Under the pieces are notes generated by a model. The model saw only the letters and a list, made by a program, of their open reading frames with translations, was not told the origin of the DNA and ran no database searches. From positions 50,654,001 through 50,718,000 of the forward strand of contig NC_043010.1 in the NCBI RefSeq assembly GCF_006345805.1: a stretch of 64,000 nucleotides of DNA, in the 5' to 3' direction. The position numbers and the translations under genes are program-made. This document shows, piece by piece, positions 45,782 through 54,482 of this stretch. Source of the stretch: Octopus sinensis (taxonomy: Eukaryota). Every line of letters begins with the position of its first letter. The stretch's first letter is position 1.

Positions 45782-48700
45782 TTGAAAAATTTTTCGGAAA
45801 TTGTCCCCAAACTTTTCGAAATATTTTTTGAAAATTTTCCTAAAAAATTTTTGAGAATTTCCCATCAAAATTTTTCAAAATGTTTTTGAAAATTTTGAGG
45901 AAAATTTTTTAAAAATTTTTTAAAAATTTTCCCCAAAAATTAAAAAAAAATTTTTTGAAAATTTTCCTCAAAATTTAACAAAAATTTTTTGAAAATTTTC
46001 CTCAAAAATTTTTCGAAAATTTTCCCCAAAATGTTAGAAAAATATATTGACAATTTTCCTCAAAAATGAAAAAAAAATTTTTGGAAAATTTTCCCCCAAA
46101 ATTTTAGAAAAATTTTTTGAAAAGTTTCAACAAAAATTTTTGAAAAATTTTGTTGAAAATTTTCCCTCAAAATTTTAGAAAAACTTTTTAAAAATTTTCC
46201 TGAAAAATTTTTTGAAAATTTTCCCCAAAACTTTACAAAAATTTTTTGAAAATTTTCCCCAAAATTTTTGAAAAATTTTAGAAAAATATTTTGAAAATTT
46301 TCCCCAAAAGTTTTCCTCCAAAATTTTTGAAAAATTTTATAAAAACATTTTGAAAATTTTCCTCAAAAATGTTTTGAAAATTTCCCCGAAAATTTTAGAA
46401 GAATTTTTTGAAAATTTTCCCTAAAAATTTTCAAAAAATTTTCCCCAAAATTTTCGAAAAATATTTTTATAATTTTCCTCAAAAATTGTTTGAATATTTT
46501 CCCCAAAACTTAAAAATTCTTTGAAAATTTTCCTCTAAAATTTTTTAAAAAAGTTTTTGAAAATTTTCCCCAAAAGTTTTCCTCCAAAATTTTTGAAAAA
46601 TTTTATAAAAACATTTTGAAAATTTTCCTCAAAAATGTTTTGAAAATTTCCCCGAAAATTTTAGAAGAATTTTTTGAAAATTTTCCCTAAAAATTTTCAA
46701 AAAATTTTCCCCAAAATTTTCGAAAAATATTTTTATAATTTTCCTCAAAAATTGTTTGAATATTTTCCCCAAAACTTAAAAATTCTTTGAAAATTTTCCT
46801 CTAAAATTTTTTAAAAAAGTTTTTGAAAATTTTCCCCAAATATTTTTGAAAAATTTTTGGGTAAAATTTTCAGTGAAAATTTTCAAAAAACCCATATAAC
46901 GAATATGCTCCATATTCTGAAGTCTATAAACGTCGATATGGACATAGTTGTTAAGTGTAAAGCAGAATCTAGTGTATCGTGGATGGTGAGGCATCTTGAC
47001 TGTAGTAGTAAATCAGAATTCACTCTATATATACACAAAAAAGCAGCAGCAGCAGCCACCTAATAATCAATTATTAGCCATAACATATATCATTAGCTTA
47101 TGGAAAATTTTCGTAAAATTTACGGTTAAAATTTTCGATGAAAATTTTCAAAAAATTTTTGAGTAAAATTTTCAATGAAAATTTTCGGAAACCCATATAA
47201 CGAATATGCTGATGTCTATAAACGTCGATATGGTCATATTTGTTAAGTGTAAAGTAGAATCTGGTGTATCGTTGAACGTGAGGCATCTTGACTGTAATAT
47301 TAAACCAGAATTCACTCTATACAAAGAAAGCATGAGAAGCAGCCAGCTAAAATTCTATTTTTAGCCATAACATCTATTTTTAGGTCGGTGAAAATTTTCG
47401 AAAAATTTTTGAGGTAAATTTTCGAAATTTTTTGGTTAAAATTTTCGAAATATTTTTGGGTAAAATTTCGAAAACCCATATAACGAATATGCTCCATATG
47501 CTGAAGTCTATAAACGTTGATTTCAGTAACAATTTTGTTCAAAAATTTTTCGAGAATTTTCACCGAAAATTTTGCCAAAAAATATTTCGAGAATTTTACC
47601 GAAACTTTTGTATAAAAATTTTGCGAAACTTTTCACCGAAAATTTTCCCCAGAAATATTTCGAAAATTTTCATCAAAATTTTCAGAAAACTTTTGCCGAA
47701 AATATTCCCCAAATTTTCTCCAGTTTTTCCACTAAAATTTTTCGAAAACTTTAACCGAAAAATTGACCCAAAGAATTTTCGAAAATTTTCCACAAAGTAT
47801 GGAAAGCCTGCGGTGCCAAAATCACAAAGTACGGAAGGCCAGAGGTGACAAAATCAAAATGTATGGAAGGCCAGCGGTGCCAAAATCACCGAAAATTTCA
47901 CCCAAATATTTTTCGAAAATTTTACCCAAAAATTTTCGAAAATTAACCCCGGCCTAAAAATAGATGTTTTCCGAAAATTTTCATTAATAATTTTACCCAA
48001 AAATTTTCAAAACAAATTCCGAAAATTTTCAGTAAAAATTTTGTCCAAAAATATTTCGAGAATTTTCACCTAAAATTTTGTCCAAAAATTTTTCGAAAAC
48101 TTTCACCGAAAATTTTAACCAAAAATTTTTGGAAACTTTTCACCAAAACTTTTCGAAAACTTTTGCCGAAAATTTTCCCCAAATTTTCCACTAAAATTTT
48201 TCGAAAGTTCTCACAGAAAATTTTGCCAAAAAATTTTTGGAAAATTTTCAGAAAACTCTTCCTGAAAATTTTCCCCAAATATTCCACTAAAATTTTCCAC
48301 TAAAATTTTCTCCAGATTTTCCACTAAAATTTTTCGAAAATTTTCCCCAAAGTATGGAAAGCCAGCGATGCCAAAATCACAAACTATGGAAAGCCAGCGG
48401 TGCCAAAATCACAAAGTATGGAAGGCCAGAGGTGCCAAAATCACCGAAAATTTTATCCAAATATTTTTCGAAAATTTTACCCCAAAATTTTTCGAAAATT
48501 TTCCCCAAACATTTTTGAAAATTTTCCCCGAGCTGAAAATAGATGTTTTGGCAAAAAAAGATTTTTAATTGGTAACTGCTGCAGCTTTCTGTGTATATAT
48601 AGTGTGAATTCTGGTTTACTACTAGTGTCAAGGGGCCTCACCATCCATGATACACCAGATTCTGCTTTACACTTAATAACTATGACGATATCAACGTTTA

Positions 48701-51700: not shown

Positions 51701-54482
51701 AAAATTTTCAAAAATGTTTGGGGAAAATTTTCGAAATATTTTGGGGTAAAATTTTCAGTGAAAATTTTAGAAAAATTTTTGGGTAAAATTTTTGGTGAAA
51801 ATTTTCGAAAATCCATATAACGAATATGCTCCATATGCTGATGTCTATAAACCTCGATATGGTCATAGTTGTTAAGTGTAAAGTAGAATCTGGTGTATCG
51901 TTGATCGTTAGGCATCTTGACTGTAATATTAAACCAGAATTCACTCTATTCAAAGAAAGCATAAGAAGCAGCCACATAAAATTCTATTTTTAGCCATAAC
52001 ATTTATATTTAGGTCGGGGAAAATTTTCGAAAAATTTTTGGGTAAAAGTTCCGAAAAATTTTGGGTTTTATTTTCGGTGATATTGGCATTTCTGGCCTTC
52101 CATACTTTGTGATTTTGCACCGCTGGCTTTCCATACTGTGTGATTTTGGCATCGCCGGCTTTCCCTACTTTGGGTAAATTTTTCAGTGAATTTTTGGGTA
52201 AATTTTTCGGTAAAAATTTTCGAACAATTTTAGTGGAAAATTTGGGGAAAATTTTATTGGAAAATTTAGTTGCAAATTTGTGGAAAATTTTCGGCAAAAG
52301 TTTTCGAAAAATTTTGGTGAAAATTTTCGAAAAATTTTCGTAAATTTTTTGGTAAAATTTTGAATGAAAATTTTCGGAAACCCATATAACGACTATGTTC
52401 CATATGCTGATGTCTATAAACGTCGATATGGTCATAGTTGTCAAGTGTAAAGTAGAATCTGGTGTATCGGTGATCGTGAGGCATCTTGACTGTAATATTA
52501 AACCAGAATTCACTCTATACAAACAAAGCAGCAGAAGCAGCCACCTAAAATTCTATTTTTAGCGATAACATCTATTTTTAGGTCGGGGAAAATTTTCGAA
52601 AAATTTTTGGGTAAAATTTTAGGTGAAAGTTTTCAAAAAATATTCGGACAAAATTTTCAGTGAAAATTTTCGAAAAATTTTTGGGTAAAATCTTTGGTGA
52701 AAATTTTCGAAAATCCATATAACGAATATGCTCCATATGCTGAAGTCTATAAACGTCGATATGGTCATAGTTGTTAAGTGTAAAGTAGAATCTGGTGTAT
52801 CGGTGATCGTGAGGCATCTTGACTGTAATATTAAACCAGAATTCACTCTATACAAAGAAAGCAGCAGAATCAGCCACCTAAAATTCTACTTTTAGCCATA
52901 ACATCTATTTTTAGCTCAGGGAAAATTTTAGAAAAATTTTTGGGGAAAATTTTCCGTGAAAATTTTCTAAAAATTTTTGGGTAAAATTTTGTGTGATTTT
53001 GGCACCGCTGGCTTTCCATATTTTGTGATTTCGGCACCTCTGTCCTTCCATACTTTGTGATTTTGGCACCGCTAGCTTTCCATACTTTATGATTTCTGCA
53101 CCGCTAGGTTTCCATACTTTGTGATGTTGGCACCACTGATTTTCCATACTTTGGGGAAAATTTTCGGAGAAAACTTTCGAAAAATACGGGTAAATTTTTC
53201 GGTGAAAATTTTCGGAAAATTTTTGGAGAAAATTTTCGTAAAATTTTTGGGGAGAATTTTTCGTGAAATTTTTCGAAAAATTTTTGGGTAAAATTTTTGG
53301 TTAAAATTTTGGAAAGATTTTGGTGAAAATTTTCGAAAAATTTTTGGGGAAATTTCGAAAAATTTTCGGTGATTTTGGCACCATTGGCTTTCCATACTTT
53401 ATGAATTTGGCACCTCCGGCCTTCCATACTTTGTGACTTTGGCACCGCTAGCTTTCCACACTTTGTGATTTTGGCACCGCTGGCTTTCCATACTTTGTGA
53501 TGTTGGCACCACTGATTTTCCATACTTTGGGGAAAATTTTCGGAGAAAACTTTCGAAAAATACTTGGGTAAATTTTTCGGTGAAAATTTTCGGAAAATTT
53601 TTGGGGAAAATTTTCGTAAAATTTTTGGGGAGAATTTTTCGTGAAATTTTTCGAAAAATTTTTGGGTAAAATTTTTGGTTAAAATTTTGGAAAGATTTTG
53701 GTGAAAATTTTCGAAAAATTTTTGGGGAAATTTCGAAAAATTTTCGGTGATTTTGGCACCATTGGCTTTCCATACTTTATGAATTTGGCACCTCCGGCCT
53801 TCCATACTTTGTGATTTTGGCACCGCTAGCTTTCCACACTTTGTGATTTTGGCACCGCTGGCTTTCCATACTTTGTGATTTTGTCACCGCTGGCTTTCCA
53901 TACTCGGGGGAAAATTTTCGGAGAAAATTAAAAAAAAATCTTTGGGTAAATTTTTTGGTGAAAATTTTCGAAAAATTTTAGTGGAAAATTTTAGTGGACA
54001 ATTTAGTGGAAAATTTGGGGAAAAGTTTTTGCAAAAGTTTTCGAAAAAATTTGGTGAAAATTTTCGAAAAATTTTTGGGGAAAGATTTCGAAAAATTTTC
54101 GGGTGAAATTTTCGGTGATTTTGGCACAATTGGCCTTCCATACTTTATGATTTTGGCACCCCTGGCCATCCATACTTTGTGATTTCGGCACCGCTAGCTT
54201 TCCATACTTTGTAAATTTGGCACCGCTGGCTTTCCATACTTTGTGATTTTGGCACCGCTGGCTTTCCATACTTTAGGTAAAATTTTCGGATAAAATTTTC
54301 GAAAAATCTTTGGGTAAATTTTTCGGTGAAAATTTTCGCAAAATTTTTGTGGAAAATTTGGGGAAAATTTTAGTGGAAAATTGAGTGGAAAATTTTCGAA
54401 AAATTTTCGGCAAAATTTTCGAAAAATTTTCGGCAAAATTTTCGAAAAATTTTGTTGAAAATTTTCCCCCAAAATTTCTCAA
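45782..54482. repeat. 8.7-kb complex satellite: A/T-tract spacers, ~13 copies of a ~200-bp CRESS-Rep-like unit and blocks of 32-bp repeats
   Basis: Units at about 46889, 47190, 47477(partial), 48540, 48830, 49570, 49862, 51052(partial), 51240, 51488, 51811, 52380, 52713; each complete unit translates to ..RF(C/Y)FTL(N/D)NY..I.VYR.Q(H/N)MEHIRYMGF or a close variant. Confidence 0.9.

What the first reader, a model, noticed from the sequence alone, without database searches (positions are those of the whole stretch)
46889..52919. Satellite built from a CRESS-DNA-virus-like origin plus Rep start (candidate novel system)
Seen: ~11 near-complete and 2 partial ~200-bp units. Each has a TATA-like element, then TAATATTAC (exact at 47294-47302, 48909-48917, 49942-49950, 51923-51931, 52492-52500, 52825-52833), then 7 nt later ATG-PH(H/D)xRYTRF(C/Y)FTL(N/D)NY..IDVYRxQ(H/N)MEHIRYMGF, always truncated at the same base. 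Known: TAATATTAC is the geminivirus-type nick site, FTLNNY is RCR motif I of circo/nano/CRESS Reps, and Rep ATGs often sit next to the origin. Inference: an endogenous ssDNA-virus fragment retaining nick sites was amplified into host satellite DNA. It could be mobilised in trans, act as a Rep decoy, or be a piRNA source. A Replitron-like HUH transposon origin is an alternative. Caveat: only a loose stem (gaattctggt...accagattc, ~38-nt loop) encloses the nonamer, and motifs II/III are absent.
Basis: partly seen in the sequence, partly recalled or inferred. Interest (0 to 1): 0.88.

Follow-up and report, generated by a model that had tools for sequence, protein, structure and literature searches.

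The report
Viral Rep fragment turned local repeat
A 205-base piece of an ancient circovirus-like virus (promoter plus the first 36 codons of its replication gene) became fixed in what looks like an octopus genome and was copied 13 times inside a patchwork of simple repeats. It is a decaying viral fossil, not a working replication origin.

Summary
The repeats are real. There are 10 full and 3 partial ~205-bp units at 46887-52907, on both strands. They sit inside a composite array (45777-~54485) built with AT-rich minisatellites and 32-bp repeats.

The 36-codon reading frame is the N-terminus of a circovirus-like (CRESS) Rep, but only two intermediate sequences show this. A profile of the window peptides finds two proteins among 1.84 billion (E 4e-11 and 1.9e-7). 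One of them passes Pfam Viral_Rep and matches solved circovirus Rep nuclease domains. Both lie on contigs that also carry a capsid-like gene and a host SINE that occurs in the window, so they are endogenous viral elements of a related cephalopod.

The "origin" reading fails:
- The nonamer is expected about 3 times per 64 kb by chance.
- It is present in one unit subfamily only and absent from the relatives.
- It has no stable hairpin (z about 0).
- The relatives keep their own stem-loop about 80-95 nt upstream of the ATG.

The copies evolve neutrally (pN/pS 0.7-0.9). Amplification was by duplication and inverted duplication, including a 1,036-bp higher-order repeat.

Verdict: a Rep-derived viral fossil recruited as a repeat monomer. 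This is a new variant of a known kind, of moderate interest.

The parts
45777..54485 (.). Composite repeat array with three modules: AT-rich 12/24/37-bp minisatellite, 32-bp repeats and the Rep-derived ~205-bp units. It holds a 1,036-bp higher-order repeat (48348 to 49384) and inverted duplications.
   Evidence: TRF; sequence at both edges; inverted arms up to 321 nt at 96%; modules absent from the rest of the window
46887..47089 (-). Rep-derived unit, singleton group S (85-89% to all others). It is the copy closest to the relative L002. ATG at 46994 and the 36-codon frame is open. A TATA run is present. The site of the nonamer differs from it by 2 bases.
47183..47376 (-). Rep-derived unit, group B, with the exact nonamer at 47294-47302. 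ATG at 47286. The frame is open but has one in-frame deletion.
47466..47524 (-). Partial unit holding only the last 59 bp. It lies at an inversion junction and is part of a 321-nt inverted duplicate of 48687-49007.
48540..48745 (+). Rep-derived unit, group A1. A TATA run is present. The start codon is lost and there is one in-frame stop. No nonamer (3 mismatches).
48835..49037 (+). Rep-derived unit, group B and the reference copy. Nonamer at 48909-48917, ATG at 48925, open 36-codon frame 48925-49032.
49575..49779 (+). Rep-derived unit, group A1, 99.5% identical to 48540-48745. The start codon is lost, with one in-frame stop and one frameshift.
49868..50070 (+). Rep-derived unit, group B, identical to 48835-49037 (100% in the unit alignment). 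Nonamer at 49942-49950, ATG at 49958.
51060..51145 (+). Partial A1 unit holding only the first 86 bp. It lies at the second inversion junction.
51232..51385 (-). Partial B unit lacking its first ~50 bp. ATG at 51344 and the frame is open. The nonamer site has 1 mismatch.
51480..51686 (-). Rep-derived unit, group A1. The start codon is lost and there is one in-frame stop.
51803..52005 (-). Rep-derived unit, group B. Nonamer at 51923-51931, ATG at 51915, frame open.
52372..52574 (-). Rep-derived unit, group B. Nonamer at 52492-52500, ATG at 52484, frame open.
52705..52907 (-). Rep-derived unit, group B. Nonamer at 52825-52833, ATG at 52817, frame open.
47791..50964 (+). Span holding the four plus-oriented blocks of three 32-bp repeats: 47791-47889, 48348-48444, 49384-49480 and 50868-50964. 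They punctuate the higher-order repeat.
52077..54274 (-). Span holding the five minus-oriented blocks of 32-bp repeats: 52077-52172, 52992-53153, 53369-53529, 53747-53904 and 54115-54274. From 52983 to 54419 they form a 378-bp higher-order repeat without Rep units.
44463..45779 (+). Neighbour, not part of the unit: a Helitron Rep/helicase gene fragment. It is broken by frameshifts and cut off at the array edge. The helicase half is absent from the window.
   Evidence: Pfam Helitron_like_N 2.2e-11; tblastn map; 90% nt identity to an O. bimaculoides paralogue that continues into the PIF1 domain

Best explanation
The unit is a dead fragment of an endogenous circovirus-like (CRESS-DNA) virus. It holds about 50 nt or more of the Rep promoter region ((TGC)n run and TATA box), the 5'UTR and the first 36 codons of Rep, cut off before nuclease motif II.

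One already-truncated fragment became embedded in an AT-rich minisatellite in a cephalopod chromosome. It was then multiplied by ordinary DNA-level processes: unequal exchange or replication slippage gave a ~290-330-bp period, then a 1,036-bp higher-order repeat, and inverted duplications followed.

It encodes no functional protein and carries no demonstrable origin. The nonamer in group B is an incidental AT-rich 9-mer in the 5'UTR.

Shown: homology to Rep through intermediates, host integration, neutral evolution of the copies, and the duplication architecture. Inferred: a single capture event and the recombinational mechanism of spread.
For: Homology to Rep:
- A profile of seven window peptides searched against 1.84 billion proteins gives two genuine hits, both aligned from residue 1: P0001 (E 4.1e-11) and P0003 (E 1.9e-7). 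The other three hits are adapter or repeat artefacts.
- Pairwise identity is 60-76% over 34-35 aa, and DNA identity to L002 is 70-81% over the coding part.
- P0003 passes Pfam Viral_Rep (38.3 bits, cut-off 26) and aligns from its residue 7 to solved circovirus Rep nuclease domains such as 2hw0 and 5xor.
- The next reading frame of L002 matches the second half of Viral_Rep (E 2.4e-12).

Host integration of the relatives:
- L001 carries a divergently oriented ORF with an arginine-rich N-terminus. It is 53% identical to a remnant in L002.
- Both contigs start with the SINE family that is interspersed in the window.
- The same contigs recur in four sequencing runs.

One truncated ancestor:
- All 13 copies share the same 3' end, and no other Rep or Cap piece is in the window.
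- Upstream homology to L002 is significant for the (TGC)n-TATA segment (0 of 300 shuffles).

No constraint after amplification:
- pN/pS is 0.66-0.93 among the copies, against 0.24-0.42 between the window and the relatives.
- Variable columns fall 9/8/6 by codon position.
- Three copies have lost the start codon and carry a stop.

Mode of spread:
- Unit groups are 98-100% identical within a group and 82-89% between groups.
- There is a 1,036-bp higher-order repeat, and inverted arms reach 321 nt at 96%.
Against: - The window peptide does not reach any Rep model or structure directly. Homology rests on two intermediates from one sequencing project of unidentified organism.
- The codon statistics come from 36 codons with near-saturated synonymous differences.
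- The origin of the first ~50 nt of the unit is unresolved.
- Eight of the eleven units that cover the reading frame keep an ATG and an open frame. That is more than expected if decay were old, although it is consistent with recent duplication.
- Genome-wide copy number and expression are unknown.
Confidence: 0.75

Rival explanations
1. Exapted small-RNA source. The array, with viral promoters in each unit and blocks in opposite orientation, is transcribed into sense/antisense or hairpin RNA. That RNA is processed into siRNA or piRNA against related circovirus-like viruses. The origin of the sequence would be as in the best explanation, but the array would be maintained for defence.
For: - Inverted arms of 170-321 nt at 90-96% identity with spacers of 0.5-3.6 kb.
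- Five units keep a TATA run that is conserved with the relative L002.
- Tandem endogenous geminivirus arrays in yam give siRNAs (PMC5014472).
Against: - No expression data are available.
- The copies evolve neutrally, and half have a degraded TATA.
- Inverted duplications are common in any unstable repeat array.
- Only one locus is known.
Confidence: 0.12
2. Helitron or Helentron cargo. The array was built or carried by the rolling-circle transposon whose Rep/helicase fragment abuts it, as satDNA-like arrays are carried by Helentron derivatives in oysters.
For: - A Helitron_like_N ORF and its continuation end exactly at the array edge.
- Helentron-borne short arrays are documented in molluscs (PMC7492417).
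Against: - The Helitron ORF is cut in mid-gene, where its O. bimaculoides paralogue runs on into the PIF1 helicase.
- The missing half is not on the other side of the array.
- The paralogous locus has none of the three repeat modules.
- No Helitron termini were identified.
Confidence: 0.07
3. Retained origin. Group-B units keep a functional nick site just upstream of the Rep ATG, and the array arose from, or can still respond to, Rep-driven rolling-circle replication.
For: - The exact nonamer is 7 nt before the ATG in six units.
- The unit's 5' edge, about 100 nt upstream of the ATG, lies within 10-20 nt of where the relatives have their stem-loop.
- Tandem endogenous ssDNA-virus arrays that include origins exist (PMC5014472, PMC6372831).
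Against: - The nonamer is at chance frequency (2.9 expected per window, 2 unrelated hits).
- It differs by 2-3 bases in groups S and A1, and is absent from the same region of L001 and L002.
- It lies downstream of the TATA box, in the 5'UTR.
- The stem is no better than shuffles and is broken in copy 46887.
- The relatives' own hairpin, with covarying stems and an almost identical loop, is elsewhere and is not detectably kept.
- The units are separated by non-viral repeats rather than joined head to tail.
Confidence: 0.04
4. Chance resemblance. The unit is a host exon or an unrelated repeat that merely looks like a Rep start.
For: No direct Pfam or PDB match for the 36-aa peptide or for its 36-position profile.
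Against: - Database-wide E-values of 4e-11 and 1.9e-7 to proteins that are themselves Viral_Rep.
- Collinear DNA identity of 70-81% from the ATG onward, plus the promoter segment.
Confidence: 0.02

Closest known systems
Endogenous circoviral / CRESS-DNA elements (CVe) in animal genomes, including molluscs (Dennis et al. 2018, PMC6069186; 2019, PMC6372831)
   Same: A Rep-derived, degraded virus fragment fixed in a host chromosome. Rep fragments predominate over Cap. Mollusc genomes (bivalves and gastropods) are known carriers.
   Different: The host here is apparently a cephalopod, a group not among those listed in PMC6069186. My library searches found no report of a CRESS-type endogenous element in a cephalopod. 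Only 36 codons plus the promoter survive, and the fragment is a repeat monomer rather than a single insertion.
Amplified CVe: tandem full-length circovirus genomes in cyprinid fish, and LINE-1-borne CVe in carnivores at 10-20 copies (PMC6372831)
   Same: Multiplication of a circovirus-derived sequence within the genome after, or at, germline entry.
   Different: The cyprinid arrays are whole genomes joined head to tail. The carnivore copies are dispersed by retrotransposition. Here a 205-bp fragment is interleaved with non-viral minisatellites and spread by local direct and inverted duplication.
Geminivirus-related DNA (GRD) of Nicotiana and EGV1 of Dioscorea (PMC5014472)
   Same: Endogenous ssDNA-virus sequence comprising the intergenic region plus a partial Rep gene, present as clustered repeats. 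EGV1 gives siRNAs.
   Different: Those are plants and geminiviruses, with units of 1-2.6 kb. EGV1 keeps a GC-rich stem with the nonamer loop. The present units have no demonstrable origin hairpin, and their affinities are with circovirus-type Rep.
SatDNA-like short arrays carried by Helentron-derived elements in oysters (PMC7492417)
   Same: A mollusc genome, short composite arrays outside classical heterochromatic satellites, and a rolling-circle transposon nearby.
   Different: The monomers there are not virus-derived. Here no Helitron termini bracket the array, and the adjacent Helitron gene is merely truncated by it.

Membership tests
CRESS-DNA virus Rep (HUH nuclease domain, Pfam Viral_Rep PF02407) | Profile match above the curated threshold | tested here: not met
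   The window peptides give no Viral_Rep hit even at E<=10. The relatives do: P0003 38.3 bits (cut-off 26), and the second-frame piece of L002 47.4 bits. The window holds a fragment of a member, not a member.
CRESS-DNA virus Rep (HUH nuclease domain, Pfam Viral_Rep PF02407) | Motif I region at the N-terminus, homologous to that of known Reps | tested here: met
   Residues 7-17 of the window peptide align with residues 7-17 of P0003. Those residues in turn align with the motif-I strand of solved circovirus Rep domains. The link is by transitivity only.
CRESS-DNA virus Rep (HUH nuclease domain, Pfam Viral_Rep PF02407) | Motif II (metal-binding HUH), motif III (catalytic Tyr) and the SF3 helicase domain | tested here: not met
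   tblastn of the L001 and L002 Rep pieces finds only the first ~36 codons anywhere in the 64-kb window.
CRESS / geminivirus-type replication origin | Nonamer presented in the loop of a stable stem | tested here: not met
   DNA folding gives -3.4 kcal/mol with z 0.07 and a loop of about 38 nt. The stem is absent in copy 46887.
CRESS / geminivirus-type replication origin | Nonamer conserved among copies and relatives, and more frequent than chance | tested here: not met
   The exact nonamer is in 6 of the 12 units that cover the site. It is absent from L001 and L002 at the homologous place. 2.9 occurrences are expected per window, and 2 lie outside the array.
CRESS / geminivirus-type replication origin | Iterated Rep-binding sites next to the hairpin | tested here: inconclusive
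   A 12-13-nt direct repeat about 20 nt apart and a short AT hairpin lie in the 5' part of each unit. They have no detectable homology to the relatives' origin region.
Endogenous viral element | Virus-derived sequence contiguous with host chromosomal DNA and no longer a complete virus | tested here: met
   The same window holds a U2 snRNA gene, a tRNA gene, SINEs and a Helitron. Only a Rep 5' fragment is present.
Satellite DNA | Long head-to-tail arrays of one monomer in high genome-wide copy number | tested here: inconclusive
   Locally there are 13 copies at a 250-570-bp spacing, on both strands and interleaved with two other repeat types. Genome-wide abundance cannot be tested with these tools.
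Tandem endogenous ssDNA-virus arrays (GRD / EGV1 / cyprinid CVe type) | Viral units joined directly to each other, with the unit spanning the origin and (part of) Rep | tested here: not met
   Every unit is flanked on both sides by non-viral AT-rich minisatellite. An origin is not demonstrable.
Helitron / Helentron-borne array | Array lying between the element's termini | not tested
   The termini of this Helitron family are not defined here. The indirect evidence is negative: the ORF is cut mid-gene and the paralogue lacks the modules.

The most novel reading that the evidence does not exclude
The array is a maintained antiviral locus of a cephalopod. A circovirus-like Rep 5' fragment with its own viral promoter would have been multiplied in both orientations, so that transcription yields double-stranded or hairpin RNA and hence small RNAs that target the Rep start of circulating relatives. 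That would be an EVE-derived immune memory built as a satellite.
Probability: 0.1. Interest if true: 0.7.

Novelty: new variant of a known kind. Interest (0 to 1): 0.4.

Why it matters
It would add cephalopods to the hosts with a fossil record of circovirus-like viruses. The two related loci found here still pair a Rep with a capsid-like gene and a covarying origin hairpin, so they document an unsampled viral lineage. No closer relative turned up in 2.9 million viral contigs or 241 million metagenome records.

It also shows a route of intragenomic amplification of viral DNA that differs from the known ones (whole-genome tandems and LINE-1 hitch-hiking). Here a promoter-plus-start-codon fragment is recruited as a monomer of a composite repeat.

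For genome scanning it is a caution. A famous 9-mer in AT-rich DNA is expected by chance several times per window, and it should not be read as an origin without a hairpin and conservation.

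Tried and rejected
Searches that gave nothing:
- Direct Pfam and PDB searches with the peptides and with a 36-position profile gave no Rep hit; the query is too short.
- The word-indexed protein search with the peptide found nothing. 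With P0003 it found only P0003 itself.
- With P0003 it gave only distant CRESS contigs, 28-39% identical, in IMG/VR and JGI metagenomes.
- A degenerate DNA pattern back-translated from the window's own peptide had no exact match in viral or metagenome contigs.
- Exact look-ups of three window ORFs returned nothing, so the source assembly was not identified that way.
- A literature search for the SRA run numbers returned nothing.

Tests that came out negative:
- Homology of the unit's first ~50 nt to the relatives' origin hairpin is not above shuffles.
- A weak match of the same segment to the tail of L002 falls in an unrelated ORF and was judged chance.
- The 32-bp repeat has no similarity to L001 or L002. 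The AT minisatellite gave only one marginal match to the minus strand of L002 (3 of 200 shuffles), which I take as an AT-rich chance match.
- The Helitron as source of the peptide is rejected. Its protein is Helitron_like_N/PIF1 and is unrelated to the unit.

Full report
**1. What is in the sequence**

The window is eukaryotic. It holds a U2 snRNA gene (19732-19925, 184 bits) and a tRNA-Lys gene.

A blastn of one unit against the window finds 13 copies, all between 46887 and 52907. Ten are full (194-207 bp) and three are partial. They lie in three blocks of alternating strand: minus (46887-47524), plus (48540-51145) and minus (51232-52907).

They are not joined head to tail. Each is flanked by an AT-rich 12/24/37-bp minisatellite. 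Blocks of three to five 32-bp repeats punctuate the region. The whole composite array runs from 45777 to about 54485. None of its three modules occurs elsewhere in the window.

The units fall into three groups:
- A1 (48540, 49575, 51480, plus the partial at 51060), 98-100% identical to each other.
- B (47183, 48835, 49868, 51803, 52372, 52705, plus the partial at 51232), 93-100% identical.
- A singleton, S (46887), 85-89% identical to everything else.

A 1,036-bp higher-order repeat (48348 to 49384) carries [32-mers, A1 unit, B unit, minisatellite] at 99.5-100% unit identity. Inverted duplicates reach 321 nt at 96%. Two of the partial units sit at the two strand-switch points.

**2.

The nonamer read from 48909-48917 recurs at exactly the six listed places. 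All copies end at one base, where the minisatellite begins.

The nonamer does not hold up as a signal:
- It is a property of group B only. S differs by 2 bases, A1 by 3 and the partial B by 1.
- A Markov-1 model of the window predicts 2.9 +/- 1.7 occurrences per 64 kb. Two unrelated ones exist, at 42523 and 63466.
- The six hits are copies of a single ancestral site, so the 9-mer carries no statistical weight.
- The proposed stem folds at -3.4 kcal/mol against -3.5 for shuffles (z 0.07). It does not form at all in copy 46887.
- A TATA run is present only in A1 and S.

**3. Is the peptide a Rep start?**

Directly, no tool says so. Pfam gave no Viral_Rep hit at E<=10. PDB gave nothing for the peptide or for a 36-position profile. 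The word-indexed search found nothing.

The exhaustive HMMER search of 1.84 billion representatives, run with a profile of the seven open window peptides, returned five proteins. Three are artefacts: two translated adapter concatemers and a bacterial repeat protein. The other two align from their first residue:
- P0001: 78 aa, E 4.1e-11, 76% identical over 34 residues.
- P0003: 104 aa, E 1.9e-7, 60% identical over 35 residues.

P0003 passes Pfam Viral_Rep (38.3 bits, cut-off 26). From its residue 7 onward it matches the solved nuclease domains of circovirus Rep proteins, such as 2hw0, 5xor, 6wdz and 7lar.

On P0001's contig the next reading frame matches the second half of Viral_Rep (E 2.4e-12). 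Further downstream there is a helicase-like piece.

The window peptide is therefore homologous to the first beta-strand and motif-I region of a circovirus-type Rep. This holds by transitivity through two intermediates.

**4. What the intermediates are**

Both lie on short Logan contigs from one sequencing project: L001 (913 bp) and L002-L004 (about 1.77 kb). The same contigs recur in four runs.

L001 has a divergently oriented ORF with an arginine-rich N-terminus. It is 53% identical to a remnant in L002. It has no Pfam match, so I call it capsid-like by inference.

Between the two genes each locus has a hairpin. The loops are 13-14 nt long and identical but for one base, while the stems differ completely yet still pair. 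That is the expected look of a conserved origin. It lies about 80-95 nt upstream of the Rep ATG and upstream of the TATA box.

The Rep of L002 is broken by at least two frameshifts and one stop. The motif-II region of L001 is degenerate.

Both contigs begin with a piece of the SINE family that is interspersed at least nine times in the window. They are therefore endogenous elements in a genome related to that of the window.

The Helitron ORF next to the array is 82% identical in protein and 90% in DNA to an Octopus bimaculoides locus. From this I infer that the host is an octopus-like cephalopod.

**5. How much of the virus is in the unit**

DNA identity to L002 runs from the ATG to the last base of the unit, at 70-81%.

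Upstream, only the (TGC)n run and the TATA box of copy S are significantly similar to L002 (0 of 300 shuffles).

The first ~50 nt of the unit cannot be matched to the relatives' origin hairpin or to anything else in them. A collinear resemblance can be drawn by eye, but it scores at chance level.

The relatives' 5'UTRs are unalignable with the unit and lack the nonamer. No other Rep or Cap piece is in the window.

**6. Selection**

Between window copies and L001 or L002, pN/pS is 0.24-0.42. Those lineages therefore diverged mostly while Rep was a working gene.

Among window copies pN/pS is 0.66-0.93, and variable columns are spread 9/8/6 over the three codon positions. Three copies have lost the start codon and carry one stop, one of them also has a frameshift, and one other copy has an in-frame deletion.

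With 36 codons these numbers are crude, but they agree with neutral decay after amplification.

**7. Mechanism**

The shared 3' end means that one already-truncated fragment was the founder. The nested identities (82-89% between groups, 93-100% within, 99.5-100% between higher-order copies, 96% for the largest inverted arms) describe successive local duplications and inverted duplications. This is the usual behaviour of unstable tandem arrays.

Nothing requires Rep-driven replication.

The adjacent Helitron gene (44463-45779) is cut in mid-ORF at the array edge. Its helicase half is nowhere in the window, and its O. bimaculoides paralogue has none of the modules. I therefore treat it as a bystander, although Helentron-borne arrays are known in molluscs (PMC7492417).

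**8. Comparison with what is known**

- Rep-derived endogenous circoviral or CRESS elements are well documented, in bivalves and gastropods among others (PMC6069186).
- Amplified forms are known as whole-genome tandems in cyprinid fish and as LINE-1 passengers in carnivores (PMC6372831).
- Plants have clustered geminivirus-derived repeats with origin and partial Rep (PMC5014472).

The present case differs in three ways: the host group, the tiny promoter-plus-36-codon monomer, and its interleaving with non-viral repeats. My searches of the paper library found no report of a CRESS-type endogenous element in a cephalopod. That is not proof that none exists.

**9. Verdict**

The Rep interpretation is right. 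The origin, nick-site and 'novel system' interpretations are not supported.

This is a new variant of a known kind, of moderate interest. The most novel reading still open is a small-RNA-producing defence locus built from inverted viral-promoter units. I put it at about 0.1.

Noticed in passing
window 19732-19925 (-) and 36348-36421 (-): A full-length U2 spliceosomal RNA gene (184 bits) and a tRNA-Lys(TTT) gene. They show that the window is eukaryotic nuclear DNA.
   Followed up: partly
window ~21400-27800: A block of about 6.4 kb of (TG/TA)-rich microsatellite with G+C of 15-18% and GC skew near +1. It generates many spurious long ORFs.
   Followed up: no
window 3737-4057, 14234-14590, 15271-15636, 35351-35657, 37234-37589, 38929-39275 and others; L007 1237-1513; L001 1-36; L002 1-38: A SINE-like interspersed repeat of about 300 bp with at least nine copies in the window. 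The same family is in Octopus bimaculoides and at the ends of the Logan contigs that carry the related endogenous Rep genes. This ties those contigs to a related host genome.
   Followed up: partly
window 40078-40350 and 40641-40913: Two ORFs of 90 aa that differ by one residue, which indicates a recent tandem duplication of about 563 bp next to a (CA)n-type microsatellite.
   Followed up: no
window 44463-45779 (+): A frameshifted Helitron Rep/helicase gene fragment (Helitron_like_N), 90% identical in DNA to an O. bimaculoides paralogue. It is truncated exactly where the repeat array begins.
   Followed up: yes
window 52983-54419: A 378-bp higher-order repeat (3.8 copies, 88% matches) made of five 32-mers plus AT minisatellite, with no Rep-derived unit. 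The non-viral modules therefore form arrays on their own.
   Followed up: partly
window 48822-48880 and the same part of every unit: The 5' part of each unit holds a 12-13-nt direct repeat about 20 nt apart, whose two copies vary together between unit groups. It also holds a short AT hairpin just before GGTGGC, with different stems in the three groups. The hairpin is significant against shuffles only in copy 46887 (z -2.3). The origin of this segment is unexplained.
   Followed up: partly
L001 455-500 and L002 478-525: The two related endogenous elements keep an origin-like hairpin between the capsid-like and Rep genes. The 13-14-nt loops are nearly identical and the stems are entirely different but still pair. 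The viral lineage has no close relative in IMG/VR or JGI metagenomes (best 36-39% identity).
   Followed up: partly
database hits P0002 and P0005 (not in the window): Two 'proteins' in the public collection are translations of concatenated sequencing-adapter sequence. They score against any query containing a short matching peptide, so they act as a trap for short-peptide searches.
   Followed up: no
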